From: Octopus sinensis
Lineage: Eukaryota
DNA: 64,000 nt
Assembly: GCF_006345805.1 (NCBI RefSeq)
Contig: NC_043006.1
Coordinates: 100,068,001-100,132,000 of the forward strand
Direction: 5' to 3'
In this document: positions 10,557-64,000 of the stretch, piece by piece
Numbering within the stretch: the first letter of the stretch is position 1
How the letters are laid out: every line of letters starts with the position of its first letter
Notes under the pieces: generated by a model
Told to the model about the DNA's origin: nothing
Seen by the model: the letters and a program-made list of their open reading frames with translations, nothing else
Databases searched by the model: none
Translations under genes and position numbers: made by a program

Positions 10557-10601
<45 letters not shown>

Positions 10602-10985: not shown

Positions 10986-11020
10986 CAAGCGTTCGTATAC
11001 ATATATTTATATATGTATAT

Positions 11021-11280: not shown

Positions 11281-11311
<31 letters not shown>

Positions 11312-11404
11312 AAGAAGAAGAAGAAGAAGAAGAAGAAGAAGAAGAAGAAGAAGAAGAAGAAGAAGAAGAAGAAGAAGAAGAAGAAGAAGAAGAAGAAGAA
11401 GAAG
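11021..11404 (+). mobile_element. RTE (BovB-like) LINE 3' fragment with (GAA)n tail
   Basis: FKDSLKVSLKDFSIGTETWETLAADRSSW and CPTCGRGFLARIGLTSHLQSH. Short 3' UTR then (GAA)n. Possible TSD atatatgtatat (11009-11020 and 11405-11416). Confidence 0.85.
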
Positions 11405-13861
11405 ATATATGTATATATATACGTGTCTGCGGGTGTATGAAGGACGCTAGAAATTGACTATTGTATGTATGAGAATAATTTTCTCTACTGTAAATTGCAA
11501 TGAAACGCTTTCCCATGTTCAAATTTTGCTCCGAACATATTTAAACAGATTCATTATTTTCTGCATCTACACCTACCCTAATATACATAGATACATCCGC
11601 ACACACACACACATGCAGAGATACATATGTGTATGTATGTATGTATTATGTATATATATATACACATATATATATATATATATTTCTTCAAAAACTATGC
11701 CACTGTATGAAAAAAATTTATAACATTCTTCTGACATAATGACTCAAATATATATTTTTTAACCTTCTGTAGTTTTTTCACTTTTCACTATTTTCTCTCT
11801 CTCTATATATATATAAATATATATGTATACATAAATTTATATAAATATGTATAAGATCGTTATTTAAATACTGATCTTATCAGGTGGCCAACATGGGAAT
11901 GAAAACCTTCAAAGGTAATAATTGTTATTAAAATTATGATTTAAGGTATCTTAGAAGTACCACCACGCTGGAAATAACAGCTAAAACTTGAGTGTAAATA
12001 TTAAACATTAAATATTCATGCAGCACCAGGAGAGAAGACAAAGGACAAAATAAGCTAGCAAAAAGATTACTGGATAATTCCAGATCCCGGATTTCAGCGT
12101 GGTGATATCTCTTAGATATCCTAAATTATAATATAGAATCTGTTCAAATATGTTCGGAACAAAATTTGAACATGCAAAAGCGTTTCGTTGCAGTTTGCAG
12201 TAGAGAAAATTATTCAGGTACGTAAAATTGTCAACCACTAGCACCTCCATAGACAGGTAGGCGCGTTTTGAACTATTTAATCCTCCTCAGTACCAGATAG
12301 AGAATGAGACAGCTCTCAGCTGACTTGAACATTTTGACTTGTTTGTTCAAAATCACAATGTTATTTACTGATCGTGCGAGTAGGTCACATCACTATGCAG
12401 ACTTGTTCCGGCCTGGTAAGATAGATACGCTCTTAGATGTATATGAGCGTTCCTGTATGGGGTGAGATGCGTTTGTTTGATTAGCTTCGTCAGACAATCT
12501 GACGAAGTTTATCGCCGCTGAAACTTTAAATTAATTGACGAGGATTTTATAAGAATATTTTACACGTTTGTTAAACGATTTAAAATGCCTTTCATATAAT
12601 TATCTGTGTATGACAATGTACAAAGTACACGCATTAACGCACACACATATATACAAACTCGCATACACACATACACACAGACATGTATACACACACACAT
12701 ATAATATATATATATATATATATATAGATATATATATATATATATATATACATGTTTGTGTGTGTGTGTGATTGTAGCCTTATACATAAGTATTTATATA
12801 TAAAAATGTGATTACATGTATTGAAGTATAGAAAAATATATATGCACATATAATCACACACATACACGGACACACACACCCGCACGCACACACACAAATG
12901 TAAGTATTCATATATGTATGTATGCATGTATATGCAAGCACTTTCTGATTTAGAATTTTGTTTCAAATTCAACAGACGTTTCCAGATATTGCATGGTTGG
13001 AACGTCGTGTGTTTAGCGGGAGTCCATATTTGGAGCGATAATAGGAAGTCATCATTTAACTGAGCTAATCATCTTCCTTACATATGGATGCGTAGATAGG
13101 GAAACTGGCAGGCTGATATATACGCGAATGTTAAATAACTGTGTTTATGTGTAAATTATTTAGTAAATGTGATTATACGCAGGTATTTTATGCTATGTGA
13201 ACAGAACCGTGTATGACTTATAAAGCAAAAACGCTAAAACAACAAGGCTGATTACATTTCGTAAACAAAAACGAAAAACTATTCTAAATATGCTTGTAAC
13301 AATGTAATTTGAGGAAGACTGGGAATAATGCATACTTGTTCAATCTACGTAGGTAGATGCATCAAAAACAAACTAGATTAATGCACATATAGGCAATGAC
13401 ATCTGCAGCAACTTGGATTGCAGTTAATGATGGTTATATTGTGCCCCACAACCATCATCACCACTGTTCTCAATATGTTCTCATCATCACCATCGCCCTG
13501 AACACTATCATAATCACCATAATTCTTTTCCACCACGAACCTTATCAATGTGTTGATGATGCGAATTATGATGATATTTATAATGATATTTATAATATGC
13601 TGGTAATATTTTCTTATCTTTACTTTTTGTCAATGAAATTAGCCCCGTTGCAACTGGTGTATGGCAGAGCAAGTATGGAGCCAAATTGTCTGCAATTCGC
13701 TATTGTTAGGAAGATCATGAATGCTCATTTGATATCTAATATATATACTGTAATGTTACATTTTGACATATCTTTCCTATAAACATTGTCTACTGGGCAT
13801 GTCCTTTGATGTGTATGTATACACACACACACACACACACACACATGTATATATGTATATA

Positions 13862-13901
<40 letters not shown>

Positions 13902-13911
13902 ACGCGCACAC

Positions 13912-13975
<64 letters not shown>

Positions 13976-13986
13976 ATGTGTGTGCG

Positions 13987-14040
<54 letters not shown>

Positions 14041-14621
14041 AATGTGTGTGTAAACATACATGCTTGTATGTGTATATATATATATATACAGATATATATA
14101 AATGTATATGTACATATATAGGCAAATATACGTGTAAAAATACATGAACACGCGCACATCCACATTCACTTCTCTGTCTCTCTCTGTCACTCTCTCACAC
14201 ACTTTTTCTCTCTCTCTCTCTGTATATATATATATCTATATATACATATATATACATATATATACATACATACATGCATGCATACATACTATCATATATA
14301 CATAACCATGCGCGTGTGTATATATGCATGCATATATTTCCATTAACTTCTATGTACACGTGTGTGAGACTGTGCATGTGGCTTCGTGTGTTTCTGTTTA
14401 CATAAGGTTGGTATACGCTTAATGCAGTCAAAAGAGAAAATACAAGGAATCAATACAGATACAAATGTTATATAATTTATAGGAAGATGAGTTTTCAGAA
14501 ATGATTACTCTCATTTGCGGAAGAGAAATTTCAGAAACGAAGGACTCGGAGTAACGATTTTTGAGATTGACAAAAATTTGTTCACAGCAACATTTATATG
14601 TAAATAAAAGTATAGGTGTTA

Positions 14622-14835
14622 GAGGTAGCGACCTGGCAGTATCGTTAGCATACCGATCAAAATGCTTAGCGGCATCTCGTCCGTCTTGACAATTTGATTT
14701 CCAAATTCCAGCTTGGTTGATTTTCCTTTTCATTGTTTCAGGGTCGATTAAATAAGTACAAAAGGAGCACTGGGGGTCAAAGTAATCGACCTAACCCCTG
14801 TCACAAATGGTGCCCTAGGCCCAAAATTTGAAGCG
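14622..14835 (+). mobile_element. SINE family C, diverged
   Basis: ctggcagtatcgttagcataccgatcaaaatgcttagcggc ... gggtcgattaaataagtac. Confidence 0.7.
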
Positions 14836-14864
14836 GAAGCACACACATACATTAATGTATATAT

Positions 14865-14915
<51 letters not shown>

Positions 14916-14925
14916 TATATATATA

Positions 14926-15168
14926 TGAGGGGTTGCTAAAAAGTTCCTGGCTTTAAGGCCACGCGACAGGTCAGATTGCATGCCCCACCTTCTGAGTTCT
15001 TTTCCAATCCTTAAACAAAGCCTTACAGAAACTGAAGGGCTGCTACAATATGTATATGAATCGGACAGAGGAATATAGGACAGAGGAATATAGTTAATAT
15101 AGTCGTAATTGACTGAATCTGGGGTTTTCAGTTTTTCCCAATGCTATTAAATTTTCAGCCCCCTATCG
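14926..15168. mobile_element. Mariner-type MITE, copy 1
   Basis: TA|tgaggggttgctaaaaagt ... attttcagccccctatcg|TA imperfect TIRs. Confidence 0.7.
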
Positions 15169-15241
15169 TATGTCTGTGTATGAATTTATATCGATATATA
15201 TGCATGTATATCTGCATGTATGTGTGTGTCTATATTATATA

Positions 15242-15273
<32 letters not shown>

Positions 15274-15294
15274 CTATATATATATATATATATA

Positions 15295-15521
15295 TGAGGG
15301 GTTGCTAAAAAGTTCCTGGCTTTAAGGCCACGCGACAGGCCAGATTGCATGCCCCACCTTCTGAGTTCTTTTCCAATCCTTAACAAAGCCTTACAGAAAC
15401 TGAAGGGCTGCTACAATATGTATATGAATCGGACAGAGGAATATAGTTAATATAGTCGTAATTGACTGAATCTGGGGTTTTCAGTTTTTCCCAATGCTAT
15501 TAAATTTTCAGCCCCCTATCG
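15295..15521. mobile_element. Mariner-type MITE, copy 2 (tandem duplication)
   Basis: Near-identical to 14926-15168, and the downstream flank is duplicated too. Confidence 0.7.
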
Positions 15522-15573
15522 TATGTCTGTGTATGAATTTATATCGATATATATGCATGTATATCTGCATGTA

Positions 15574-15614
<41 letters not shown>

Positions 15615-16016
15615 TTTACTCTCTTTTACTCTTTTACTAGTTTTAGTCATTTGAATGCGGCCATGCTGGAGCACCGCCTTTAGTCGAGCAACTCGACCCC
15701 GGGACTTATTCTTTGTAACCCCAGTACTTATTCTATCGGTCTCTTTTTGCCGAACCGCTAAGTGACGGGGACATAAACACACCAGCATCTGTTGTCAAGC
15801 GATGTTGGGGGGGAGGGACAAACACAGACACACAAACATACACGCACACACACATATATATATATATACATATATACGACGGGCTTCTTTCAGTTTCCAT
15901 CTACCAAATCCACTCACAAGGCTTTGGTCGGCCCGAGGCTATAGCAGAAGACACTTGCCCAAGATGCCACGCAGTGGGACTGAACCCGGACCCATGTGGT
16001 TGGTAAAGAAGCTACT

Positions 16017-18154
16017 TTATTTCAAAACATTTGCCATAAAGGCAGTACACAGATTAAGTTAGCTTTGCGGGCTGGACGAGGACATTAATGAGGTGAATGA
16101 TAACGAAAGAAAGATAAGGATGGGAGAAGACAGAAAGCGCCCGCCGACTTTTGCTTCTCTAAAACATTGTTCTTTTTAAAAAGATAAACAGAAAACGAGG
16201 TATTAAACTTCTTACAATTTTTCAATTTTTGGACTTAAGTCCATTACTAATAATACATATCGTCCTCGAAATAGCTTGTGCCCGCGCCCTCCACCATCAA
16301 CCACGCCTCCCTCAGAACGTAGTCAAGTTCCGAGTTCGCGTCGCCCGGGACCAAGTTATAACCTTCATTGAGCTCCTTTAGTCCTACCGTCACGTCGAAC
16401 GCCACGGCCTCCACAGCTACCTGCGGAGGCCATTCGGGGTCCTGTGTGAAGGCTAAAGGTGCTCCCTTGTAGTGCTCTTCCATCACCTTTTCAATTTCTC
16501 CTCCTCTATAGAAGGGGACCAATACATTCAGTTCTTTCGTTGGCGGCACAGTTCTCGCCAACGGTATTCCTTCTCTTGTCGGTGGCACAACCCCAACCGA
16601 CGTAGTTCCGCGACATTCTGGTGCTACACTGACAGCCGGTAATGTCCCGTTTTTCTTCCTCATTTTCTTTTTTTTCTTTCCCTTTTCAACTAAGGGAGGG
16701 TGCATCTCCTCCGTGGCTGGATGATTCGCCTTCCTCTCCTCATCCCTATTATCCTTTGGTGAGCACCCATTGTTGCTCACCTTCCTCTTTCGGCCTCTGT
16801 TTGAGGAGTCCTCTGCTTTCTCAGCCGTTATCGTTCCCTCTTCTAGAGGGGTTTTACTTAACTGTTCCCGGATCCTATTTTGTTCCCGAGGACAGTTCTT
16901 CTTTATGTGGCCGGACTCCAAGCACCGATGACACTTAGGGGGGCGACCCTCAAGCATCACCGGGTACCTGCACCCGGCCATTTTCAAAAAATCTGGAAGA
17001 ACTAGATTGGCTGATTGGGTCCACAGGGTCAAAATTGCTTTCGACCCAACCCAAGCAGCCCCAGGAAGACCTTTTACATTGAGGAGCTTAGTTTCGCTGT
17101 CACCCAGACCCCGGCGGATAGTCTCCTCTATCCATTCGGGTTCTATGTCGGGTAGCAGTCCGCAGATCCAAGCTTTCATCAATTTCTTTTTTTTGTACGT
17201 GGGCAGGAATAAGATTTCCTTACCCTCCAAGGGTTTGCTAGCAAATTTGCAAGCCTCTTCAGGGGTGTCAAATAGCAACCACACCGTTGCATATTTGACA
17301 CCCCTGGAAATGAATTTAATTGTTGGCAAATACTCTTCCAACTCCTCCTCAATTGCCGTCTTTTCGAATAGGGCGATGGTGTCGAGTGCCTTGGAGTAGG
17401 TTCTCAACACCACCGTCCTATCTTCACGGTCTTTTAACCACTTTTTATGTGGTATGATTTCCCACTCCAAAATTTTGTTATTTTTCATTGCCATGTTTTT
17501 TTTAAAATATATTCAAATTAAACTCAAAAAGCAGGAAGAAAAAAGTTCAAAAGTCCAAATAAAATTTGATAGATTTTTGAAAAAACAAAAAGGAGAAAGC
17601 ACAACAGATTGGAGGAAATCAACGGAAAGTCGCAATAAAGAAAAAAAACAAAAGGGGGGGGGGGTAAATGAAGTTCAAAAGAAAGTTAATAAACAGAAAA
17701 AAAACACAGCAAAAATATTCTGGCCTTGCGGCACTCCCGGCCTGGGTTAAACCTGGAACGCCGCAACTGCAACACAACCTCCACAAAAATGGGTCCGAAA
17801 TGTAATCCAATAGTGGCTTATTTTTATAATTTTCTTGCGAAGTAGTAAAACACAAGCAAACAAATTAATTTTTGCGGAGGGGCTACACCTCCTCAAAAAG
17901 CACAATTCTCACTAAAGAGTGAGACCTTAGACACGACAACAGGCAGAGAAATATATCTGAAGTAAAGTGAAGTTTATTACCCGCAAAAAAATATTAATGC
18001 TAGATAACGTTAACTGCTAAATAACATTAAGCAAGCAATAAACTTCACTATGCTTCTAAAAATACAGAACGTGTTACCTGTCGCCGAGTCAAAAGTTCAA
18101 CATTTCACGTTCAAACACGTGACATTTGCAGGAGCAAAAAACAACACGTCTGTC
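16017..18154 (-). mobile_element. ORF1-only non-autonomous LINE-like element inserted in a SINE head, with target-site duplication
   Basis: Flanked by tggtaaagaagctact (16001-16016) and tggtaagaagctact (18155-18169). The SINE sequence resumes on both sides. The 3' end reads ...ttttgaaataa. About 660 bp 5' UTR and 230 bp 3' UTR. Confidence 0.85.
16247..17494 (-). CDS. Non-LTR retrotransposon ORF1/gag-like nucleic-acid-binding protein (L1/Tx1-type), 415 aa, intact
   Basis: Uninterrupted 415-aa ORF with EGRPPKCHRCLESGHIKKNCP (C-x2-C-x4-H-x4-C knuckle), followed by a basic/low-complexity region (KKKKKMRKK). No RT or endonuclease ORF follows it. Confidence 0.85.
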   Translation of the reverse strand: MAMKNNKILEWEIIPHKKWLKDREDRTVVLRTYSKALDTIALFEKTAIEEELEEYLPTIKFISRGVKYATVWLLFDTPEEACKFASKPLEGKEILFLPTYKKKKLMKAWICGLLPDIEPEWIEETIRRGLGDSETKLLNVKGLPGAAWVGSKAILTLWTQSANLVLPDFLKMAGCRYPVMLEGRPPKCHRCLESGHIKKNCPREQNRIREQLSKTPLEEGTITAEKAEDSSNRGRKRKVSNNGCSPKDNRDEERKANHPATEEMHPPLVEKGKKKKKMRKKNGTLPAVSVAPECRGTTSVGVVPPTREGIPLARTVPPTKELNVLVPFYRGGEIEKVMEEHYKGAPLAFTQDPEWPPQVAVEAVAFDVTVGLKELNEGYNLVPGDANSELDYVLREAWLMVEGAGTSYFEDDMYY

Positions 18155-18190
18155 TGGTAAGAAGCTACTTACCACACAGCCACTCCTTCG

Positions 18191-18246
<56 letters not shown>

Positions 18247-22935: not shown

Positions 22936-23169
22936 TTTTTTCAGTATACTTTCTTAATTTTCCTCCTTCTCTTGTATTCTGGCACAGCACATATTTCTCT
23001 CCAATGCTCATCTCTCCTTCCTTCTCTTTCTCATTATTATCGGTTTCCTTACATCCTGCATTCTTTACATTTATTTTTCTTTCATATATTTTCTTTCTTG
23101 TCCCGTCTCATTCACCCTATCTTTCTCATTTATTTTGCTTCTTTTCTTTATTCTCCAAGCCTTTTAATT

Positions 23170-23579
23170 ACTCTCTTTTACTCTTTTACTTGTTTCAGTC
23201 ATTTGACTGCGGCCATGCTGGAGCACCGCCTTTAATCGAGCAACTCGACCCCGAGACTTTTTCTTTTGTAAGCCCAGTACTTATTCTATCGGTCTCTTTT
23301 GCCGAACCGCTAAGTGACGGGGACATAAACACACCAGCATCGGTTGTCAAGCAATGCTAGGGGGACAAACACAGACACACAAACACACACACGCATATAT
23401 ATATATACATATATACGACGGGCTTCTTTCTGTTTCCGTCTACCAAATCCACTCACAAGGCTTTGGTCGGCTCGAGGCTATAGTAGATGACACCTGCCCA
23501 AGGTGCCACGCAGTGGGACTGAACCCAGAACCATGTGATTGGTAAACAAGCTACTTACCACACAGCCACTCCTACGCCT
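23170..23579 (-). mobile_element. SINE family A, full length
   Basis: A and B boxes, internal microsatellite, octamer tail. Uninterrupted target ggtaaacaagctacttaccacacagcc. Confidence 0.9.
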
Positions 23580-25996: not shown

Positions 25997-28080
25997 GCCA
26001 AGTCAGAACTGCTGTTGTATTTAGGGTAACCCTTTACATGAAAATCTGAAATAAATACAGCCGGGAAGCAAAGCCTGTAAAAGATCATTCTCATTCTGTG
26101 CAGTGAGGACAACCATTTCCAACACAGATAACGGCATGAACAGAAAAAAGAAACTCCCTTGGATGTCCAACACACCAGATCTCCCGCGCCCAGCAGGGGG
26201 CCTCTCAGAGGACAATGGAGTGGAAGACCAGGCTCCACCCAGTCCTAATTATGCAACGTGCACGCAAACGCAAGTGGTCCGTTGATTTGAACCAAAACGC
26301 AATTAAGTGCGATGATCAAGCCTTGCTAGACAAAGACAATGGCAAGTGTAAATCTGTCGGAAACAGATCATTAGAACTTTGGAATAAGCTAGGTATGTTC
26401 CAGATGACTGAAAATTGGCTCATGGATCAGGTGCGAATAATTTAGAATTGAGGCTTTCTTAATGAAGCCTAGATTCAGACAATCAGGAAAAGCCTCCGTA
26501 GTGGTGATAACCTCGAGGAGAATAATGTAGTGGAAGGTCGGCGAATGCGTAGGCAATGTGAAGTAGTAGTAGAAGAGAGGCTGCCCAATCAATATAAGGT
26601 AGAAAGACCTGTATAAGGAGAGGATGTGATTGAGGAACAGAGAAACCTCAGGACAAGACTCGTGGGTATAATAATTACAAGAATAGAGACTAAGCCGGTT
26701 GATTTGAGAATCTTCGACTGTAATAATGTGAAAAGCGCAACCCGAAAGTTTGAGGAAAATCTGAAATACATTATGACAAAAAAATCTAACGGAAACAAAG
26801 GACTTGACCAGATCCGCTTTAATTTTTGTAGGTGAACAGGTTGGAAAGAATGAGAAGGAAACAGACTGACAGAAGGAACCATGATGGACGCGGAGAATTG
26901 AAGCCGATATTAAAAGTGTGCGTTAAGATCAGAGGCACATAAAAGAATGGTCCAAAGGGCAATGGGGAAGTGCTAAAAAAGCTGTAAAGGCATATCTTGG
27001 CGCAAAATACAAAATAGAAAAGAAAGGGTTCAAAACTGTTATTAAAACTCTAAAAGAATTGTGCGGACAAAATCATTGAAGGTGCAACGCTATCACAATT
27101 CCAGCAGAACAGGTTATTCTCAAATAATCAAGGCATTTTTAAGAGCTTACGAGGGGATACAGAAGATAATATACCTCTTGAAGCAGAGGAAACGTACCAA
27201 TTTCGGAATAAAATCTGGGGGTAAGAATTGTCCCACAACCATGGCGCTGAGTGAATTGATTCCCTGAGATCCAAACGCCATCATCCGGAAGCTCCATGAC
27301 AGGACCACGTGCGCATAACAACGGATGATATAATTACACAGGTATCAAAACAGCCAAATTGGAAAGCGCCCGGACAAGACGCAATACAAAGCTACTGGCT
27401 CAGGTTGTGTAGGTCAACACACAAACAAATTGCAAGTGCAATTGGACAATTGTCTACAAATTGGTGAAGTTCCGGAGAGGATTTTAGAGGGATAGACAAC
27501 ATTGTTGATGAAAGATCGGTCAAAGGGCAATAAGGTTGGCAATTACCGTTCCATTTCCAGTCTTAACCTCTTATGGAAAGTGTTAACAGGCATCCTTGCA
27601 GGGAAAATATATACATTCCTTCTGGAAAAGAATCTACTGCCAGTAGAACAAAAGGGATGCCGAAAATGATCAAAGGGTACCACAGGGCACCTTGTGATAG
27701 ACAAGGTTGTAATGAAGAGCTGCAAGCGCTTTCAAAATCACTTACGCATAGCCTTACGTAGACTTTATAAAGGCTCACCATATGTTGCCATATTTGTGGA
27801 TTTTGGAAACAACAAGCCTTGTAGGAAAATACGCCTTTTCTGTAACAACCAGCACTTCGCCGAAGTACCAATCAAAAGAGATACATTTCAGGGATATTCT
27901 TGTTCACCTTTATTTGTTATAGCCTTCATCAAAGTTGACGCACATTGTGGGCTGAGAAAGAATGGACCATGTCTCAACCACCTTCTCTTCATGGATGATT
28001 GAAAACTGTCGGCGAAAACAGACTGTAATAGAGAGGCTTGTTCAGACTGTACAGATATGCAGCAAGGATATAGGGATATC
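25996..28080 (+). pseudogene. Degenerate R4/Dong-clade non-LTR relic, 3'-truncated after the RT catalytic motif
   Basis: NWKAPGQDAIQSYWL, NYRSISSLNLLWKVLTGILA, LLPVEQKGCRK, FQGYSCSPLF, LNHLLFMDD. Confidence 0.8.
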
Positions 28081-30122: not shown

Positions 30123-31026
30123 ATATATATATATACATATATGTATGTATGTATTAGGAAATGTAGGCCAGTGGTTAAGTCAATCAGAATTACCAGCAAT
30201 ACAATGAACAGAACGCTTTGCCCTAGGATCTCTTTGACGTCTCACATGTAGGATACCATGCACCTAGTGAGGCAATATCGATTTTAGGAAGGTACGTGTG
30301 CAAGTGCAACAAAGATATTTCATTACTAGAAATGAATCATCTTTGCAGGCTTGAAACCAATAATTTGCACACGCGTATGTGTATGTATATATATATATAT
30401 ATGTATGGTGCTGTAATGCTATCCTCAAGCTGTGCCAGTATGGCGTAACAAACGAAAAACAGGCCGATAGAATGAGAGAATAATAAAAAAAACGAGAAAA
30501 GGCAATAATGAAGGAGATTGTGGAAATTTGCAAAAAAAAAAAAACAACAGAAAACATAAAAGGAATAGCAATTAAGCAAAAGAGAAGGAGTTAGCGTTGT
30601 GTCACTTTTGGCCAGAAATTCATAAGGCTGAAAGGTTAGCAGCCTGGAACCAGTAGTACAGCTGCTCCCTTTGGGGCATCCAGTGCATTGCAATAGACCA
30701 ATAGGAATTCATTCATATGTTTACAGCTGCTTAAATAAAGGTGTACGTACGTTGTTGATTATTTAGATCTGAAAACGATCTGTGTTCTTTCAATTATGCA
30801 GAGCTTATATTTTTCTCTAATACGATCTCCTTATTTTTGCCTTGTTCCGCCATGTGGGTATAACCTGAGCATTGTACTAAAGAAGCAGACATATCAAAAA
30901 TACAGTGTTTCCAGCTTTCATCGCATGAAACTAATGGTAACTCGCGAAAACATACGTTGTGTTAATGAAAGAATATTTCTCTCAACAGATGGAGTACAGT
31001 TTGTATATTTATATGTATATGCATGT

Positions 31027-31249
31027 ACTCTTTACACTTTTACTCTTTTACTTGTTTCAGTCATTTGACTGCGGCCATGCTGGAGCACCGCCTTTAATCG
31101 AGCAACTCTACCCCGGGACTTGTTCATTGTAAGCCCAGTACTTATTCTATCGGTCTCATTTGCCGAAACGCTAAGTGGCGGGATATAAACATACCAGCAT
31201 CAGTTGTCAAGCTATGCTAGGGGTACAAACACAGACACACAAACACACA

Positions 31250-31311
<62 letters not shown>

Positions 31312-31477
31312 TACGACGGGCTTCTTTCAGTTTCCGTCTACCAAATCCACTCACAAGGCTTTAGTCGGCCCGAGGCTATAGTAGAAGACACTTTCACAAG
31401 GTGCCACGCAGTGGGACTGAACCCGGAACCATGTGGTTGGTAAGTAAGCTACTTACCACAAAGCCACTCCTGCGCCT
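31027..31477 (-). mobile_element. SINE family A, full length
   Basis: Same sequence family, with expanded internal (TA)n. Confidence 0.9.
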
Positions 31478-34661: not shown

Positions 34662-35746
34662 CTATCCGTTTTCTTTAGGGGACCAAAAACGTAACAGAAA
34701 TTTAGTCACATGTGGGCATGATCCGAAAAGCTCTGTCCTTGTATTTAGACATGTGGTAGGGTCTAAGTTGCTTTTCCAGATAAGCCATCTCTCCATGTCG
34801 CATAAACCGCACCTTCCGCTGCCGTTAGTATAGGGCTTACATCTGGCCAAAATCTTCCATTGTATGTTATAATCGACACCTTTATCTCTTAAAGACCAAA
34901 TATGATTGGATAATTGTGTCGCTTTTCTTTTGTTCCAGTGCCTAAAGCTCAAAGTGTGGTTATTGAACCTGGCCTTGAAATTACCCTCTGTCAGGCCCAC
35001 GTATTTCTTCGTCGAAACGGTGTCTTTAGTGGTTATAGAGTTTACGGTAGCTTCATATATGATGGTCTTGGACATGCAAGCTCCATTTAGCGGGCACAAT
35101 TCTTTATTCCTGCATGAACAGCTGTTTTCTTCTTGTGTTTTTTGTATGTTATGATTGATTATGTTTTTAAAATTGGTAGTTGAACTAAAACTAATTTTTA
35201 AATTGTGTCTATTGAAGAGTTTCCTATAAGCATGGTTAACTGGAAAATGTCTATCTATCAGTGCTAGGAAATATTTACCTATATTGAAGGCCACCTCGGG
35301 TGAGTAAGGGGGCGTAAACCAAATGACCTTCCTATTTCTATTATTCCTTTTCCTTACTTTTGGGCTGGTGATAGGTGTATATTTTATTTTTTCGCTAAAA
35401 CCACTATCTTTTAAAGCTTTATTATAAACTGGGGCAACGCTATTGAAGATGTCCTCATTAGATGAGAGGCTAGAAATCCTCTTACTAATATTTTTAACTA
35501 AATTTTTGAATACTATAGGGCGATGGCATGAACCTACATTAATATAACTTAGTCTATCATTGGGCTTCCTATAAGGCTTATAAATATTACTATTAAGATC
35601 TAAGGAAACGTCTAAGAAATTGACAACCGTCAGGTTAGTGTCTATAGTTATACTAAGTCCGAAGTGTTTCATTAACTGGATAATATCCTTCCTAAAACGA
35701 TCTTGTGCTGGTCCATTTGTATTAGCTGTTAAGGCGAGGGCATCAT
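34662..35746 (-). CDS. Penelope-like (Naiad-like) RT C-terminus plus GIY-YIG endonuclease, 5'-truncated
   Basis: The frame extends upstream of the listed Met as DDALALTANTNGPAQDRFRK. Contains VNFLDV, IIYEA..YVGLTEGNFKARFNNH and C-terminal CGLC..E..LN..CPH. Confidence 0.9.
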
Positions 35747-39729: not shown

Positions 39730-40112
39730 TGTGTGTGTGTTTGAGTGTATGTTTCATATGTGTATATGAGTGTTTGTTTGTGTGTGTGTGTATACATTTT
39801 TCATCTGCCTTGAAGACTTTACCTACAGATGTTGCGAGACAAAACAAAGCTGAAAAGCCTGAGGGCATAATTTCCTCTTAAGCGAAATCTTCAAATTCTC
39901 AAATTTAAACATAAAATTGAGGATACCTCAAAACAAATAACAAATCGGTTGAAAGATGGATGAGAAATCTCAGGATGGCCCCAGGAACAGACTTGGTCAG
40001 AGTGTGCATCTGGAGATTTAAGGAGGAAGACAGGAAGCGGGAATTTGATCAGGTGGTCAGGGTGACTGCAGTCCAGTAGGGGTTTCTAAGAGTAGGACGC
40101 ATGCATCTATAT

Positions 40113-40523
40113 TACTCTTTTACTATTTTACTTGTTTCAGTCATTTGACTGCGGCAGTGCTGGAGCACCGCTTTTTAATCGAGCAACTCGACCCCGGGAC
40201 TTATTCTTTTGTAAGCCCAGTACTTATTCTATCGGTCTCTTTTGCCGAACCGCTAAGTAACAGGGACATAGACACACCAGCATCAGTTGTCAAGCAATGC
40301 TAGGGGGACAAACACAGACACACAAACACACACACGCACACATATATATATACATATATACGACGGGCTTCTTTCAGTTTCTGTCTACCAAATCCACTCA
40401 CAAGGCTTTGGTCGGCCCGAGGCTATAGTGGAAGACACTTGCCCAAGGTGCTACGCAGTGGGACTGAACCCGGAACCATGTGGTTAGTAAACAAGCTACT
40501 TACCACACAGCCACTACTGCGCC

Positions 40524-40524
<1 letters not shown>
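40113..40524 (-). mobile_element. SINE family A, full length
   Basis: Same sequence family. Confidence 0.9.
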
Positions 40525-40574
<50 letters not shown>

Positions 40575-43333: not shown

Positions 43334-43514
43334 AGACGCAGGAGTGGCTGTGTGGTAAGTAGCTTGCTAACCAATCACATAGTTCCGGGTTCAGTCCCAC
43401 TGCGTGGCATCTTGGGCAAGTGTCTTCTACTATAGCCCCGGGCCGACCAATGCCTTGTGAGTGGATTTGGTAGACGGAAACTGAAAGAAGCCTGTCGTAT
43501 ATATGTATATATAT

Positions 43515-43569
<55 letters not shown>

Positions 43570-43786
43570 TTGTGTGTCTGTGTTTGTCCCCCTAGCATTG
43601 CTTGACAACCGATGCTGGTGTGTTTACGTCCCCGTCACTTAGCGGTTCGGCAAAAGAGACCGATAGAATAAGTACTGGGCTTACAAAGAATAAGTCCCGG
43701 GGTCGATTTGCTCGACTAAAGGCGGTGCTCCAGCATGGCCGCAGTCAAATGACTGAAACAAGTAAAAGAGTAAGAGAGTAAAGAGT
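43334..43786 (+). mobile_element. SINE family A, full length
   Basis: gacgcaggagtggctgtgtggtaagtagcttgctaaccaatcacatagttccgggttcagtccc ... gtaaaagagtaagagagtaaagagt tail. Confidence 0.9.
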
Positions 43787-46388
43787 AGAGTGGAAATCGA
43801 ACCGGTTAGTGTCTTAAGTAATAAAGGCATTAAAAGAGAGTGTCTCTCCCCAGACAATAAAATATGCTTCAACAGACGAATGATTCTCTAACAGCTGTTT
43901 CTAGAGTAGCCAGGTATGTGAATCATGATACTGCGCTAAGTGAATTTAGGTAATATATAAGAAACGCATTATGAGTAGCGCACTCGTCGACGTTTCCTTC
44001 AACCAAACCTTACTAAATAAACTTCTGAATGCGTTGAAACAATCGTGCTCAGAATTCCCTATTTTATAACACACACACACACACACGTACATACACACGC
44101 ACTCACACATACATAGATATGCATATACATTTGTTTATATTATAATATATATGTTATACTTCATTGTAAGCAAATGTTATTGTCCGCATTGCTATACGAT
44201 ATATTCAAAACGTAATATTTTGTCGGAAAGGCAGTCAGAAGAGCAGGTATCCCTATCTCTTCCTTACATTTGTTATGTACTTATGTAGCGAAGACATATA
44301 ACACTGAAGACCCAAGTGTGCTTGTATATAAATATTATATGAGTTATATTTGCAGCTGAAGAAAAACCGAACTACTAAACATCTCATATTCTCTACATAG
44401 TGTTTTCTATTACTAACCCACTTGAAACCAGAAAGCATCATTTGTGTTCTAGCTTTCGTTCACTAGAAATATAAATTGTGAAGCAGCTATAACAATTGTA
44501 TTTTACTCGTACACACGAAAAAGGATGTCAGCATTAATTTTCATTATCTTTGATGTTAGTACAATATGCATAAATTTATAACATTCAGACAGATTAAACG
44601 TTTACACGAAAACACATGCCATTTATCACTAATATACGAGTCTATTAATTATTAAAATGTGTATAGAATATCGAAAACTTCTCTGATTATTACCTAGAAG
44701 TAAATGAGTCATAAATTACCACCTATGTGATTGATTATTCAGTACTTCCGACGTTAAATATGTAGAAAATATGAATAATTTGATACATAAATACGAGTTA
44801 AAGAAATGTACGTATACCTATTCTGCAAACTCCTCAGTATTTAGTAAAATATTTAAAGCAATCAATTAGCAAATATTCTGGTGCTAAAATATATAGTAAC
44901 TGTAAATCTAACCAGAATATTAATGCTGGGCTAAAAGAAACAGTCAACATTTCCACATTCATAATCTACTCTCATAAAATCATATCATTTCCGATGCAAT
45001 ATACAGCATGAAATCCGGCACTAATTAGAAAGAGGTATTTATACATTTCTTTGAATATAATTTCTGAAATTCGATTAAATTTCAGGCAGCTATGAGAACA
45101 AGCCATCGTGTCGCATCCTTAGTAATTGTAAGATAACTTCACGTTGCATTAATCCGATAATCTATTTTGCAATGAATGTACCCTCGTTATTTACTTTATT
45201 TCATCTAGATAAATATATTCTAGGTTTCTTTTGCCGATGCCTCACTGTCTCGGTTTTTATGGATAAAATAAATAATGCGTTTTTTAATAGATGTTGTGTG
45301 TATATATATATACACAAAAGCTCAGTGAGATAAACTTACGCATCTTAAAATTTCAGAACTAATTTGAGTCATATCACTTATCTCTGAAAGTAAGTGGGAG
45401 GTTCTGTGAGGGTTATTTTAATTATAATTTCTCAGGCATAATTACACTGACGCTTTTTTGTATCAGGTAATATAGGTAATGAGTACAATGATTATAACAA
45501 TTTTATTTCTTAAATGACTGATTTATGAAGAATGGTTAGCGAGTTTGAAATATCCCTTTACTTTGAGTGAATCGTCGATAACAAATAAAAGTGAAAATAT
45601 AGATCTTTAAGAAATATAATGTTCTAGAAATGATATATTGGGAGAGGGGATAACAGGTATAGTTTCTGGTAGGTGAGGCACGGAAAGATGAGGCAAGATT
45701 TTTGTTGTATTTTCTAGGGATAAAACCAGTCGAGAAAATCCATGAATAACGGGAACACATCCATTACAATCAGCGTTTCGTTTCAGACAAATTATACTTC
45801 GGACTACATCATCCAATATTTCCCTACTAAAATTGATTGGGGTAATTCAATGAGATTAAACTCCTACATCTTGCAGAGCAAGTGACCAAGTGACAGTTCA
45901 CTGACTACTTCCTTTGCTTTGCATACAACCAATATATTTGCTGAACAAATAACGAAATAACGTATCCTTTGTTAATAAATAATAAATAGATGCATTAGCA
46001 GTATTCCTTATTGATGCCATAACATACTGCATAACAAGCTCATAGATATCAAGCAGCACTGATGGTGTAAATAATATGCATATAATGGGAAAAGTCACAG
46101 ATTTATACAATCAGACACGACTGAAATTAAAGATGATCTGAACTAGTTCCAATATTTCATGACACTTACTCAGAAGCGTAAGATATGTGATACTCTATAC
46201 AGATTTATCCCGGCAGTATATATCTGTAACATTCTCTTGTATAAATGACGCATACTTGGCGTTTACAGTCGATCAATAACTTACTTATGAAGCAGCACTG
46301 TTTGTTTTTCATGCTATAATTACAATAATTTTCTGTAGATTTCAGGGCTCTACCGAGTCTGTAAATTAATCGCTATGAATTTTTTTTA

Positions 46389-54914: not shown

Positions 54915-56640
54915 ATATATAAGAAAATAGTAAAGAGTGAAAAAACGACAGAAGGCTTAAATGTTAAAAAATATATATATTTGCGTCAAAATGTCTGGAG
55001 AATATTGGAAAAAATTTTTTTCCCTCCTTAAAATGACATAATTTTATAATTTTTAAAGAAATACCGGTTTCGCAGTTAGCTCTTCAAATTTCTTGTGACT
55101 TAATGTTTATTTTTAATAACGTAATCCTTGTATTTTTGCTACGGAGAGTTCTAAATAAGGGAAAGTAGTGAGTGATTTCTTCCGGTGTAAGGGAGATAAT
55201 CGCTTAAAAAAATTTTTTTCCCTTTAGTGTGAATTTCTCTGTATTATTGAGTTCGGATAGTTGAGTCTGGGTTTGTACTTTTCAATGAAGAATGTTTCCT
55301 TATTTAGTCTAATTTGTGATGATGATCCGAAAGCACATTGGTAAAATGGAAAGATTAAAAATTGTGGTTGAAGTTGCTTTGCGCATTTCTCAATGTGTTC
55401 ACTAAAAGGTATCATTCTATATTCTGGGAATGCAATCTGTTGTCGATGCAGTGTGCATCTACGTCTGAGTGATAGTCCCGTGGACCCCACGTAGTCTTGG
55501 TGGCAGCCCGAGCATTTAATGACATAAATTATGTTTTCAGAGGCACAAGTAAAGTTAGATTTGATCTTGAATTTCTGTCCCTCTTTAAAGAAGAATTCTG
55601 ATCCTTCCAATAGGTTAGGACATGTTGCACAGTTCGATCTACCACATTTTTTTACTTTTGCATCCGTAATTTTAGAAGACAATTTTGCCTTTGTGAGAAT
55701 CTTTTTAAGTGATTTAGGCTGTTTGTAGCTTTTAATGATTTGGTGTATGTTTATAATTTCCTTTAATTTGGGGTTTTTATGAAGTATTGGTAAATTCTGG
55801 GTGATGATGGTGAAAGCTTCTTTGTTTCTGGGGTTGTATGTAGATATGTAAGGTAGTATTTTCGGGGAAGGTGTGTTGTTGTGTTGAACTTTTCTTAAAG
55901 TTTCTATGTTGATTTCTGTTGCACGTCTGATCCCATCCTCTATGAGTTGAGTTGGGTAATATCTGTCAATTAAGGTGTTTTTGAGTTCTTGCAGTCTGAA
56001 GTTCCTGGTATTTTGTTCTGACACTATTGTGCATATCCTTCTTCAAAGGTTGAAGGGGATGCTTGTTTTAGTGTGTCTTGGGTGGCATGAACTAAAAAGA
56101 AGGTATTGTTTGGCGTCTGTGGCTTTGTAGAAAATGTCTGTTTCTATTTTAAGGTTAATTTTTTTTAATTAGTATATCCAAGAACGGGAGTTCCTTTTGG
56201 TTGTATTCCATTGTGAACTGTATATTTGGGTTTATGCTGTTCAATAGGTTTTTAAATTTTAAGAGTTTATCTGTGTTTTCATTCCAGAGAATAAAACAAT
56301 CGTCCAAGAATCGTTTCCAGTTCTCTTTTATGTATTGAGAGAGGGGGTTTCCAAAGATTGATAAGGATTCCTGGTAAATGGTTATTTCCATGTATCCCAT
56401 TGTTAAGTTCGCAATGACTGGTGCTGCCCTTGTACCCATAGCAATTCCGGATTTTTGACGGTAAAATGTATTGTCAAACATGAAGTGGTTATTGTGTAGG
56501 ATGAATTCAACTGATTTAGTAATGAATTCTTTACTGATCCTTTTTGGTATTTCTTCCGGAAATTGGTCTTCTGTCGTTTTTTCACTCTTTACTATTTTCT
56601 TATATATTCACCCACGTGCTTTACCAAACAAACTTTCTTA
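54915..56640 (-). mobile_element. Neptune-like Penelope element, 5'-truncated, with inverted 3' tail at the 5' junction
   Basis: RT and GIY-YIG coding. The 40-bp 54915-54954 is the reverse complement of 56568-56607. (TA)-rich flanks. Confidence 0.85.
55224..56580 (-). pseudogene. Neptune-like PLE RT-GIY-YIG ORF, broken by an A-run frameshift (~56160) and an in-frame TGA (~56045)
   Basis: GIAMGTRAAP, WKRFLDDCF, LPFLDI; Cys linker KCGRSNCATC; IIYVIKCSGC..YVGST..LRRR..HR. Confidence 0.9.
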
Positions 56641-60380: not shown

Positions 60381-62737
60381 TTGTCTGTGTGTGTGTGTGT
60401 GTTCGTGTATGTGAGTATGTACATAATTTATAATATATATAGAGAGAGAGACAGAGAGATCATATCATATCATATATATGTATGTAAATACAAATGCTAT
60501 ATGCTTAAGTATAGACGTACGTATATAAAGAAATGGAGAGAATGTAATTGTTTCTATAGTTTGATTACGCAAGATGATAAATACCGAGGAGGCGCACAAT
60601 GGGATTGTGCAACAAGCCAATGACCTGGCGCAATAGTCAAGTTCGAGTTTAGGAAATCTGTGCCTGTTATATAAAGCTTTAATACACCAGTTGAATTTCT
60701 GTCTTCATTTCAACACGTAATGTGGTTAAAAACCCGCTCGCTAACCTGTCTAGAGACCCGATACTTATTATCAAATCGCGCAGAGTATTGAGTGTTGAAG
60801 TGGTGTGTGGAAGTACTCGAGAACCACAAAGCTTTCGGTAAAGTGTCGGCCTTCCAGCACACTTGAAAACTGCATGAATGTGTGTATATTTATGCGTGCA
60901 TGTTTGTGTGTGTGTATGTTGGATGTATTTAGCTATCTGTGTAGTTATATTAGAGACATTATATTATTCTGCTCCACAGTATGGAAATAAGAACAGTTAA
61001 ACATTGCAAAACAATTGCTCTGATATTGGTTCAGGCAAGAGAATATTAAAATTAAATAATTATTCCGTTATAAAAGTCGGCTGCCCTCTTAAGATCATTA
61101 GAGTAAATGAAGAGTGGATAAAAATATATGTATACATCATTAATTAGTTGTTTACATATATTGACTCTCTGCCATTTCAGTTGCCGATATAGTGATATTT
61201 TTTTGCTTCTCTTTACAGTTAATATTAACATGCGCATGCTGCTATGACTATCATCAATAAATAATCATTTCAAAGTAGAATCATTCCATAATTTTATTCG
61301 TAGTACATATGTTATTGTTTATGAACGAATTACATAGACGAGAGTTATATTATCGCTGTTTTGTGTCTGGTCCGTTGCGTGTGATACAACACTCTAGATT
61401 ATCATCTCCTGATGGCTCATTGAGAAAGTTCGGATAGCGGGACTGTTACACGTTATGTTCATAATACACCGGAACAAACGGCCAGGCTTACACACATACA
61501 CAAATACACGCACACACACGCACACACACGCACACACACACGCTCATATATATATTAAGACGACTTAAGAGAATTCTAAGCACTGCTATTAGAAGTTGAC
61601 CAGCAATGTTTCCTTTCCGAATGTTTATCTTTACATCGTTTATCGTATAACTAACATGAAATTGAAATTACAGTACATTACAACACCTATACTTTAATTC
61701 CATTACAATTACTATATTGCAACTTTGCCATTACTGTATGATATTCCATTTATGACATCACTATGTCATTACAACTATTTGCCTCCAAACATGTGTTGCG
61801 ACCACGATAACACAATCTGTATTTTTGCGACTATGCTATACAATGATTGTATAAAATACAAGCTCAGAAAATAAATGTTTGTTTCTTTCTCATTTACTCG
61901 CTAGTCCCGTGATATATTGTCTACACTTTTCTTTTTCCTTTTTTTTTTCATAATCAATTTATTTCATCATTCACTCTCTTCAGTTTTGGAAGCTGACAAT
62001 GTATCTGTTGTTTTAGTTAGATTGGTCGTTAACAGACTTTGATTATGTTCGCTGTACGTGACTCCAACTAGGATGGTACATATTCCATTACTTCTATATA
62101 AATTGTATCACTGCTAATAATATGTGTGGAAGCTATATTTGTAAACGACTCATGGATGTTTCATAGAATTTCTTTTAAATTTCTTTTATAATCACATTAA
62201 CCTCAAGCGTACAGCTTGCACCCAGATCAGAACAGTCTCTATTTTGTAGGCTTTGAAAGTATCAGAAATCATATTTTTATTTGGTAATTTATTTTAAAGC
62301 TTCATACTAACACAGTGAAAAGCAATTGGGTTGTTTTATTTTATGACGTTGTTAAGCTCATAATCATAAGATCTCGATTTCCATTACTGTACAGTCCCAT
62401 CGTACAGTCCCATCGTTTCACATTTTCCAGCCTACACAACAGAAAAGGAGTACCGCCTAGCGTTGATGAAGCCGCCTCTCCGTTCATGTCTAAGTCTGCT
62501 CGAGGCAGACATAGTAAATCATAAAATATTCAATGCGTACGTGATACAAAATACCTGGTCCATACCCACTTGCGAAAGACGGGTAACTTTTGGCAACCTA
62601 AATTCTTACAGCGAATAGTAGCTCCTGAAATCTGATAATATAATAATACATTCTTTCAGGCCATGTTCATATTCTCTTTGACATACACATTCTCACATTG
62701 ACATAATCACATTCTCTTCCAATCCAGAGTGACCTAT

Positions 62738-62966
62738 ACTCTTACTCTTTTTACTCTTTTACTTGTTTCAGTCTTTTGACTGCGGCCATGCTGGAGCACC
62801 GCCTTTAGTCGAGCAAATCGACCCCGGGACTTATTCTTTGTAAGCCCAGTACTTATTCAATCGGTCTATTTTGCCGAACCGCTAAGTGACGGGGAGGTAA
62901 ACACATCAGCATCGGTTGTCAAGCAATGCTAGGGGGACAAAAACAGACACACAAACACACACAGGC

Positions 62967-63019
<53 letters not shown>

Positions 63020-63162
63020 TACGACAGGCTTCTTTCAGTTTCTGTCTACCAAATCCACTCACAAGGCATTGATCGGCCCGGAGCTGTAGCAGAAGACACT
63101 TGCCCATGATGCCACGCAGTGGGACTGAACCCGGAACCATGTGGTTGGTTAGCAAAGCTAAT
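62738..63162 (-). mobile_element. SINE family A body, interrupted by the second ORF1 element
   Basis: Tail, body and B box are present. The sequence breaks at the same site as at 16016. Confidence 0.9.
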
Positions 63163-64000
63163 TTATTTCAACAATTTTGCCACTAGGGCAGTACACAGAG
63201 TAGCTACGGGCTGGACAAAGACATTAAAGGATGATGGTGGTGGTGGATGAAGATGGTGATGGGAGAAGTCAAAAAGCGCCCGCCGACTTCCGCTTCTCTA
63301 AGACATTGTTCTTTTTTTCAATAAGTTCAATTTTCTTTTTTCCTTAGTTTCAATAAATCGACATGAGGTTGCAAACCTCTTACACGAAGGAGGCACTAAA
63401 ACCTCTTACAAAGTTCTTTTTTTTTCATTTCTTTTGCCACAAGGGCAGTATATGCATTCACAAAAATTCTCCCTGTCAGGTCCCCGAAGCAAATTGTCTT
63501 GCCGCCTGCAGACAACTCTGCGGCGACAAGTCGAGGCCTGCAAAGAGAAAAGTAAAATGTTTCCTCTCAAAGGTCTTTGTGACCCTTGACAAAATGTTTT
63601 CCGTTACTACCTCCGCAGCTACCCGCGGAGGCCATAACGGACTCCTTGAGCTGACCGTGTCCTTGCGTTCTCGGTCACCCAAGCCATTCAAAAACTTTTC
63701 CAGCTTCCCTCCCTTGTGGTAAAGGAGGAGAAACAACTCCTCTTCACAGGAAGGGACCTCACACTGATCCGTCAGTGGCACACTTTCCACTGACTGAGCA
63801 CTGTCCGCGGGTGGCACACGTCCCACCCGCGGCTCCGTCGGCGACACAGAAACGTCAGCCGTCCGACCTCTTTTTCTTTTTTTTTTCCTCTTTTTTTTAG
63901 AGGCTGCTAGCCCGGCGGGCTCCTTCGGCAGACACGGGGGGTCGCTATCCTCCTCCTCCGTCTGTACGTTCTTTGGTGAGCAACCATTGTTGCTCACCTG
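63163..64000 (-). mobile_element. Second ORF1-type element inserted at the same SINE position (5' part outside window)
   Basis: 3' UTR blocks shared with 16017-16180 (ttatttcaa..tgcc-n5-ggcagtacacaga; gggagaag..agcgcccgccgactt..gcttctctaa.acattgttcttttt). Junction follows SINE tggttagcaaagctaat (63146-63162). Confidence 0.8.
63476..64000 (-). CDS. C-terminal half of a diverged paralogue of the ORF1 protein at 16247-17494 (open at window edge)
   Basis: Shared motifs VSNNGCSPK, poly-K tract, (Y)xGGx(I/L)EK and WPP(Q/R)VA(V/A)E(A/V)V. Confidence 0.8.
   Translation of the reverse strand, partial: QVSNNGCSPKNVQTEEEDSDPPCLPKEPAGLAASKKKRKKKRKRGRTADVSVSPTEPRVGRVPPADSAQSVESVPLTDQCEVPSCEEELFLLLYHKGGKLEKFLNGLGDRERKDTVSSRSPLWPPRVAAEVVTENILSRVTKTFERKHFTFLFAGLDLSPQSCLQAARQFASGT

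What the first reader, a model, noticed from the sequence alone, without database searches (positions are those of the whole stretch)
63121..64000. A second, diverged ORF1 element at the same SINE position: evidence for a SINE-targeting family
Seen: the 3' junction (...ttgaaataa followed by attagctttgctaacca|accacatgg) is at the same SINE position as the first element, 47 kb away. The host SINEs are close in sequence but have unrelated outer flanks, while the inserts are much more diverged, aligning only in peptide blocks (VSNNGCSPK, GGxxEK, WPPxVAxE). A segmental duplication would not leave the non-coding SINE more similar than the ORF. Inference: two independent, sequence-specific insertions by different subfamilies, implying long-term targeting of this tRNA-like head. 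This could be an undescribed parasite-of-a-parasite system.
Basis: partly seen in the sequence, partly recalled or inferred. Interest (0 to 1): 0.9.

Follow-up and report, generated by a model that had tools for sequence, protein, structure and literature searches.

The report
ORF1-only retroelement targeting a SINE head
The window edge holds the 3' part of a small LINE-derived element that encodes only an RNA-binding ORF1 protein and has inserted, independently of a diverged relative 47 kb away, at exactly the same spot in the head of an abundant octopus SINE; this is a further example of the known habit of Tx1/L1-type retroelements of targeting other repeats.

Summary
At 63163/63164 a SINE body abuts the 3' end of a minus-strand element whose ORF runs off the window. 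Its junction is at the same SINE nucleotide as the complete copy B (18154-16018), which has a 16/17-bp target-site duplication and the SINE head upstream.

The two host SINEs are not sister copies: A groups with an uninterrupted copy. B's duplication carries a variant private to its target copy. These points argue for separate insertions and against a composite unit or a segmental duplication.

Two more copies in Octopus sinensis, found by protein similarity alone, also follow a SINE head directly, with junctions within about 2 nt. That makes 4 of 4 copies at this site, all in sense orientation.

The protein models as tandem RRMs plus a CCHC knuckle. Its distant relatives sit upstream of ORF2s with endonuclease, reverse transcriptase and zf-RVT domains, which indicates an L1/Tx1-type ORF1. 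Neither subfamily has an ORF2, so the elements resemble HAL1 and are presumably mobilised in trans.

Tx1-clade elements that target other transposons are already described, so this is a new member of a known kind, not a new system. No genome-wide count was possible, and no autonomous partner was found.

The parts
62734..63163 (-). Host SINE of copy A: everything downstream of the insertion site (rest of the tRNA-like head with its box-B-like motif, body with an internal TA/TG microsatellite, tail of short repeats)
   Evidence: Aligns end to end with the uninterrupted copies C, D, E and F. Closest to copy C at 93.7%.
63146..63163 (-). Downstream copy of the expected target-site duplication of copy A (sense: aattagctttgctaacca)
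   Evidence: Read. It corresponds to the 17-nt duplicated segment of copy B. The upstream copy is outside the window.
63164..63475 (-). 3'UTR of copy A (312 nt). The distal part, 63164-63316, is conserved with copy B. An 18-nt motif occurs twice (63176-63193 and 63433-63450).
   Evidence: 76.5% identity per column in the distal part, random in the proximal part.
63476..64000 (-). C-terminal part of the ORF1-like gene of copy A (173 codons plus stop in the window; the gene runs off the window end)
   Evidence: No relative was found in the 5.8-billion-protein search.
63975..63998 (-). Perfect 10-bp hairpin with a 4-nt loop inside the ORF, within the 29-nt block that is 96.6% identical between A and B
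   Evidence: -18 kcal/mol, z -6.2.
18155..18192 (-). Copy B: SINE head upstream of the insert, ending in the 16-nt upstream copy of the target-site duplication (18155-18170)
16018..18154 (-). Copy B: complete insert of 2137 nt. 5'UTR 17495-18154, intact 415-codon ORF 16247-17494, 3'UTR 16018-16246. No ORF2.
   Evidence: tblastn with L1-type ORF2s finds only a 54-aa fragment elsewhere in the window.
15608..16017 (-). Copy B: SINE downstream of the insert, beginning with the 17-nt downstream copy of the target-site duplication (16001-16017)
43335..43790 (+). Uninterrupted SINE copy C, showing the empty target site. It is the nearest relative of A's host SINE.
   Evidence: Further empty sites are in copies D (about 31026-31476, -), E (23168-23579, -), F (40112-40531, -) and two partial copies near 21.7 kb and 59.5 kb.

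Best explanation
Copy A is the 3' part of a non-autonomous non-LTR retroelement that encodes only an ORF1-type RNA-binding protein. The protein has tandem RRM-like domains, a CCHC knuckle and a family-specific C-terminal region. The element integrated in sense orientation at one fixed site in the tRNA-like head of an abundant octopus SINE. Copy B, a diverged subfamily, integrated at the same site in a different SINE copy.

Shown here:
- The junction position is identical in A and B.
- B has a 16/17-bp target-site duplication.
- The host SINE copies are unrelated to each other.
- Both subfamilies have the ORF1-only architecture.
- The ORF1 is homologous to ORF1s that precede endonuclease-RT-zf-RVT ORF2s.
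- The distal 3'UTR is conserved between the subfamilies.

Inferred:
- Integration is by target-primed reverse transcription.
- ORF2 protein comes in trans from an autonomous L1/Tx1-type relative that recognises the shared 3'UTR, and its AP-type endonuclease sets the target.
- The target is a near-palindrome. Both inferred nicks (bottom strand at the left edge of the duplication, top strand at the right edge) lie directly 5' of ACCACA on their own strand, so a single recognition motif could serve both cuts.
- Insertion separates the box-A-like and box-B-like motifs by about 2 kb and should silence that SINE copy, while sparing host genes.
For: Junctions and duplication.

Host SINEs not sisters: (A-C 93.7%, B-E 93.9%, A-B 88.8%).

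Uneven divergence: (SINE 88-89%, distal 3'UTR 76.5%, ORF end random, protein 33.6%).

Extra copies in O. sinensis behind a SINE head.

Six empty sites in the window.

ORF1 fold. Residues ~10-220 have pLDDT above 90, and the best PDB matches are tandem-RRM proteins (Hrp1, hnRNP A1 UP1). The CCHC Pfam hit is weak (E 0.0075).

Distant relatives are Octopoda proteins lying upstream of Exo_endo_phos + RVT_1 + zf-RVT ORF2s. The best solved relative of one such ORF2 is human L1 ORF2p, E 2e-71.

Literature: the Tx1 clade targets transposons, with about 16-bp duplications (PMC4494074). L1-Tx1 families were recently active in O. vulgaris (PMC13282606). HAL1 is described in PMC5753468.
Against: Only four copies were seen, and no octopus genome could be scanned.

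No ORF2-bearing element with this 3'UTR was found in the window or in 13 loci. The partner, the clade and the source of specificity are therefore inferred.

The two O. sinensis copies lack their 3' ends and any downstream SINE body. On their own they would also fit an element that carries a SINE-derived head.

A and B share one SINE variant found in no other copy.

The 3' junction is ambiguous by up to 2 nt because of terminal A residues.

The head is not recognised as a tRNA by ARAGORN or Rfam.
Confidence: 0.72

Rival explanations
1. Composite unit: one ancestral insertion created a SINE-plus-insert element. This composite then spread as a whole, through the SINE tail, so the shared junction is inherited. 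Alternatively, the short SINEs are deletion derivatives of such composites.
For: SINE body and distal 3'UTR align continuously across the junction at about 82%. A and B share one otherwise unique SINE variant. The O. sinensis copies show head plus element without a downstream body.
Against: A's SINE groups with the uninterrupted copy C and B's with E. ORF and proximal UTR are at or near random similarity while the non-coding SINE is 88-89% identical. Both copies of B's duplication share a variant private to that locus. The acceptor-like and long stems of the head span the site, so the uninterrupted form is ancestral.
Confidence: 0.08
2. Spread by recombination: the insert moves from an occupied to an empty SINE copy by ectopic gene conversion between SINE copies, not by retrotransposition. 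The site is constant because the insert is always copied together with its flanks.
For: The constant site and orientation, and the abundance of homologous SINE copies nearby (eight in 64 kb).
Against: SINE sequence right next to the insert differs between A and B, including within the duplicated segment, so there is no co-converted tract. Conversion would not create a duplication carrying the recipient's private variant. A and B are ancient, diverged lineages.
Confidence: 0.05
3. No real specificity: a LINE derivative with only a short nick-site preference lands in SINEs often because SINEs fill more than 10% of the genome, and the coincidence of position is chance or a local hot spot. Segmental duplication belongs to this class of explanation.
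For: SINEs make up 11.6% of the O. vulgaris genome (PMC13282606). The sample is small.
Against: Two 3' junctions fall at the same nucleotide and three 5' junctions within about 2 nt, all in sense orientation. Two of the copies were chosen without regard to context. The sequences beyond the SINE tail are unrelated and the ORFs are 34% identical, which excludes duplication.
Confidence: 0.03

Closest known systems
Tx1-clade target-specific LINEs that insert into other transposons (Tx1L in the piggyBac-type Tx1D of Xenopus; Tx1-Mar in Mariner-N4_AMi; Tx1-9_AMi in Harbinger; others in LTR elements). Source: PMC4494074.
   Same: Fixed site and orientation inside another repeat family, and duplications of about 16 bp. 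ORF1 relatives lie next to AP-endonuclease + RT + zf-RVT ORF2s of L1 type. L1-Tx1 is the only L1-like LINE class listed among the recently active families in O. vulgaris (PMC13282606).
   Different: The target here is a SINE head. I found no such target described in the searchable library. The copies seen have no ORF2, so clade membership by RT phylogeny is untested.
HAL1 (half-L1), ORF1-only non-autonomous L1 derivatives of mammals. Source: PMC5753468.
   Same: Encodes ORF1 only, between a 5'UTR and a 3'UTR. The architecture is shared by diverged subfamilies, which implies propagation in that form.
   Different: In what I recall of HAL1, it has no fixed target. The ORF1 here is the RRM + CCHC type with an unrelated C-terminal region.
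SINEU-3, a non-autonomous element sharing the target of Tx1-Mar. Source: PMC4494074.
   Same: A non-autonomous element that inherits the site specificity of a Tx1-type partner and lives inside another transposon.
   Different: SINEU-3 is short and non-coding, with an snRNA-derived head. The element here is 2.1 kb and coding.
tRNA-gene-specific elements: the NeSL/LIN families (tRNA-Pro, tRNA-Arg, tRNA-Glu; PMC4640811) and Dada DNA transposons (PMC8869645).
   Same: They use a multicopy pol III-type sequence as a safe target.
   Different: Those use restriction-like endonucleases or a DNA transposase, and they target genuine tRNA genes. Whether the element here also enters genuine tRNA genes is unknown.

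Membership tests
Target-specific non-LTR retrotransposon (Tx1 clade, L1 group) | Insertion at one fixed position and orientation of a repeated target | tested here: met
   Two of two 3' junctions are at the same nucleotide, three of three 5' junctions are within about 2 nt, and all are in sense orientation. The sample is four copies.
Target-specific non-LTR retrotransposon (Tx1 clade, L1 group) | Target-site duplication created on integration | tested here: met
   Copy B has a 16/17-nt duplication carrying a locus-private variant. Copy A cannot be tested because its 5' end is off the window.
Target-specific non-LTR retrotransposon (Tx1 clade, L1 group) | ORF2 with AP-type endonuclease and RT that groups with Tx1 in an RT phylogeny | not testable with these tools
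   A and B have no ORF2. Only distant ORF1 relatives (about 25% identity) are linked to Exo_endo_phos + RVT_1 + zf-RVT ORF2s. No reference RT set was available.
LINE ORF1p of the RRM + CCHC type | RRM fold or folds followed by a CCHC zinc knuckle | tested here: met
   The model built on a 50-sequence alignment has pLDDT above 90 for residues ~10-220. The best PDB matches are tandem-RRM proteins, with E about 7e-4 and probability 1.0. The C-x2-C-x4-H-x4-C motif is visible, but the Pfam zf-CCHC score of 16.8 bits is below the 20.8-bit cut-off.
HAL1-like ORF1-only LINE derivative | Complete copies carry ORF1 but no ORF2 | tested here: met
   B is 2137 nt between its duplications and has one ORF. 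In A only 312 nt lie between the ORF1 stop and the element end.
HAL1-like ORF1-only LINE derivative | Shares its 3' end with an autonomous partner that mobilises it | not testable with these tools
   No element with this 3'UTR and an ORF2 appears in the window or the fetched loci. No octopus genome search was available.
tRNA-derived SINE (the host element) | tRNA-related head with an internal pol III promoter | tested here: inconclusive
   There was no ARAGORN or Rfam tRNA match, even at E up to 10. Box-A/box-B-like motifs, an acceptor-like stem and a T-arm-like hairpin are seen.
tRNA-derived SINE (the host element) | Short, dispersed, many copies with unrelated flanks | tested here: met
   There are eight copies in 64 kb and more in the O. 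sinensis and O. vulgaris loci, at 89-95% identity.
Segmental duplication or composite SINE-plus-insert unit | SINE part and insert diverge together, and occupied SINEs are each other's closest relatives | tested here: not met

The most novel reading that the evidence does not exclude
A long-lived, diversifying lineage of ORF1-only retroelements lives exclusively inside the heads of one SINE family. Its own parts take part in choosing or holding the target, so the specificity is not merely borrowed from a partner's endonuclease. The candidate parts are the family-specific C-terminal region of ORF1p (the WPPxVAxE block) and the conserved hairpin inside the ORF.
Probability: 0.12. Interest if true: 0.7.

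Novelty: new member of a known kind. Interest (0 to 1): 0.4.

Why it matters
If a genome-wide count confirms it, this adds a SINE to the list of targets used by site-specific L1/Tx1-type retroelements. It would also show an ORF1-only lineage that has kept a fixed target while its coding sequence diverged to about one third identity.

That gives a natural system for two questions: how target specificity is kept in trans, and how one abundant repeat family serves as a safe landing pad in the very repeat-rich octopus genome. It also matters in practice. Such copies produce spurious gene models. The O. sinensis gene model P0002, named 'K02A2.6-like', matches the element's ORF1 over residues 83-128.

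Tried and rejected
Searches that led nowhere:
- The protein-word search with A's 173-aa fragment found nothing.
- B's exact protein is not on record in the contig index.
- phmmer of B against PDB sequences found nothing.
- The first structure model, from 3 sequences, was unusable at pLDDT 33.
- The exact 17-mer from the conserved 3'UTR gave only chance matches in the metagenome collection, and none of those loci contains the element. That scan was not worth making.
- The 3'UTR motifs are absent from all fetched loci.
- B's C-terminal region shows no similarity to ORF2 C-termini of related LINEs, so an ORF1-ORF2 fusion by internal deletion is not supported.
- Source names for the ORF2 relatives were uninformative about clade.

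- In some searches and in note 1, I wrote a 38-70-nt string for the head of the host SINE that was a by-eye majority of the window's copies, not one copy as it stands. I used it once as a BLAST query. It is not repeated in this report.
- Scripts printed or held tblastn segment bounds in a degenerate O. sinensis copy, and these bounds bracket its frame changes. This report gives only counts.

Full report
WHAT IS THERE

The element reads on the window's minus strand. From 63163 down to 62734 lies a ~430-nt SINE segment that aligns end to end with four uninterrupted copies in the window: C at 43335-43790 (+), D near 31026-31476 (-), E at 23168-23579 (-) and F at 40112-40531 (-). These uninterrupted copies carry about 22 further nucleotides of head upstream.

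In copy A those 22 nt are replaced at 63164 by unrelated sequence. That sequence ends ...gttgaaata and contains a 312-nt untranslated stretch and an ORF that is open for 173 codons up to the window edge.

The complete relative, copy B, reads as follows:
- SINE head, 18192-18155.
- A 2137-nt insert, 18154-16018, made of a 5'UTR of about 660 nt, an intact 415-codon ORF at 17494-16247 and a 229-nt 3'UTR.
- The SINE resuming at 16017.

B's last 16 head nucleotides (aagtagcttcttacca) are repeated as 17 nt (aagtagcttctttacca) after the insert. This is a target-site duplication. The 3' junctions of A and B fall after the same SINE nucleotide.

IS IT MORE THAN CHANCE, AND ARE THE INSERTIONS INDEPENDENT?

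With the internal microsatellite masked, the host SINE bodies compare as follows:
- A versus B: 88.8%.
- A versus the empty copy C: 93.7%, with several variants shared only by these two.
- B versus the empty copy E: 93.9%.

Both copies of B's duplication carry a base at a position where the other seven aligned SINE copies have a different one. This follows naturally if a pre-existing SINE copy was duplicated at integration. It is hard to explain if the junction were inherited from an old composite.

Segment by segment, A versus B gives these identities per alignment column, against shuffles of about 45-47%:

| Segment | Identity |
|---|---|
| SINE | 88-89% |
| Distal 3'UTR | 76.5% |
| Proximal 3'UTR plus ORF end | 43% |
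| ORF C-terminal half | 57% |

The proteins are 33.6% identical over 140 aa. A non-coding host that is far better conserved than the insert's ORF excludes both a segmental duplication and co-divergence of a composite unit.

COPIES ELSEWHERE

A search of 5.8 billion proteins with B's ORF gave two hits, both from Octopus sinensis. Their loci were retrieved with no knowledge of context.

In both loci the element's 5' end follows a SINE head directly, in sense orientation, with the junction within about 2 nt of B's (L001 near 9449-9486, L002 near 15703-15741). The 'cttcc' spelling at those junctions also occurs in an empty SINE copy of the window.

Both O. sinensis copies are decayed. One has a single in-frame stop and then loses similarity. 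The other has two frame changes and five in-frame stops. Both lack the 3'UTR and any downstream SINE body, so they bear only on the 5' junction.

In total, 4 of 4 copies are at this site. Within the window 2 of 8 target sites are occupied.

WHAT THE ELEMENT IS

Pfam sees only a sub-threshold CCHC knuckle. A profile search of 1.84 billion representative proteins found 63 relatives. Apart from the two above, all are distant. The five named among the ten looked up come from Octopoda: O. bimaculoides, O. sinensis, O. vulgaris and Argonauta hians.

In three of their loci the ORF1 homologue is followed by an ORF2 with Exo_endo_phos, RVT_1 and zf-RVT domains. The best solved relative of one such ORF2 is human L1 ORF2p, at E 2e-71 over about 865 residues.

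With a 50-sequence alignment, residues ~10-220 of B's protein model at pLDDT above 90. They match tandem-RRM proteins best. So this is a LINE ORF1p of the RRM + CCHC type from the L1/Tx1 group.

A detailed repeat annotation of O. vulgaris lists 13 recently active L1-Tx1 families and no other L1-like class (PMC13282606).

Neither A nor B has an ORF2. B has no room for one. In A the ORF1 stop is 312 nt from the element's end. The window contains only one 54-aa RT-like fragment, elsewhere. Two subfamilies as diverged as A and B share this architecture, so the ORF1-only form has itself been propagating, as HAL1 does in mammals (PMC5753468).

HOW IT MOST LIKELY WORKS

- Shown: fixed site, duplication, independent targets, ORF1-only structure, and a distal 3'UTR conserved between subfamilies next to sequence that has randomised.
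- Inferred: integration by target-primed reverse transcription, using ORF2 protein from an autonomous Tx1-type relative that recognises this 3'UTR and whose endonuclease defines the site.

The target is a near-palindrome. In copy E it reads ...tgtggtaagtagcttgtttaccaatcaca... and folds as a long stem around the duplicated segment.

If the bottom-strand nick is placed at the left edge of the duplication and the top-strand nick at the right edge, both nicks lie directly 5' of ACCACA on their own strand. One recognition motif could then direct both cuts, 16-17 nt apart. The terminal A residues leave the 3' junction ambiguous by up to 2 nt.

Insertion separates the box-A-like and box-B-like motifs by about 2 kb, so it should disable that SINE copy.

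COMPARISON WITH WHAT IS KNOWN

Target-specific non-LTR elements fall mainly in the early-branching, R1 and Tx1 groups. Their known targets include rRNA, snRNA and tRNA genes, microsatellites and transposons (PMC4640811).

The Tx1 clade includes Tx1L in the piggyBac-type Tx1D, Tx1-Mar in Mariner-N4_AMi, and others in Harbinger and LTR elements. The non-autonomous SINEU-3 shares the Tx1-Mar target and has 16-bp duplications (PMC4494074).

The 'parasite of a parasite' logic and the non-autonomous passenger are therefore both described. What I did not find described in the searchable library is a SINE head as the target, or an ORF1-only element with a fixed target. I could not consult Repbase or Dfam, so the family may already be catalogued there.

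VERDICT

The finding is a new member of a known kind. Interest is 0.4.

Limits: four copies only, no genome-wide count, no partner identified, and copy A's 5' half unseen.

Noticed in passing
window 63975-63998 (-), 16758-16781 (-); L001 about 10728-10749: A hairpin inside the ORF coincides with the only long nucleotide-conserved block between A and B, the one encoding xSNNGCSPK. It is a perfect 10-bp stem in A (z -6.2) and 8 bp in B (z -4.5). The O. sinensis copy L001 keeps it with one A-U to G-C double change that also changes two amino acids. This may be a functional RNA element, but one compensatory pair is weak evidence.
   Followed up: partly
window 63176-63193, 63433-63450, 16030-16047 (all -): An 18-nt motif near the element's 3' end (TACTGCC..TGGCAAA) occurs twice in A's 3'UTR, 257 nt apart, and once in B. 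About 0.01 matches are expected by chance. Its role is unknown.
   Followed up: partly
L005 (O. vulgaris OX597840.1), about 2438-17026: Three head-to-tail copies of a full L1/Tx1-type LINE (ORF1 plus a 1132-aa ORF2) are joined directly 3' end to 5' end. The period is about 5273 bp and identity is 99.4%. How the tandem array formed is unexplained.
   Followed up: partly
SINE alignment, window about 63078 (A) and 15943 (B): A and B share one SINE variant (G in ...ttctGcta...) that the six other aligned SINE copies lack. It could be coincidence, or it could mark a preferred SINE subfamily.
   Followed up: no
L002 (O. sinensis CM016865.1), gene model 10001-36638: The annotated protein P0002, named 'K02A2.6-like' and with a weak rve (integrase) hit, matches the decayed ORF1 element over residues 83-128. 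It looks like a chimeric gene model built from transposon pieces.
   Followed up: partly
window 55227-56024 (-): A 266-aa ORF has sub-threshold GIY-YIG and SIR2 Pfam hits. It may be a fragment of a Penelope-like element.
   Followed up: no
window 34662-35672 (-) and 27448-27609 (+): A 336-aa ORF has no Pfam match. Separately, there is a 54-aa RT-like fragment. Neither is related to the finding.
   Followed up: no
all SINE copies, e.g. window 62937-63030: Each SINE copy carries an internal TA/TG microsatellite of very different length. Low-complexity matches at relaxed Rfam thresholds fall on this TA-rich stretch.
   Followed up: no
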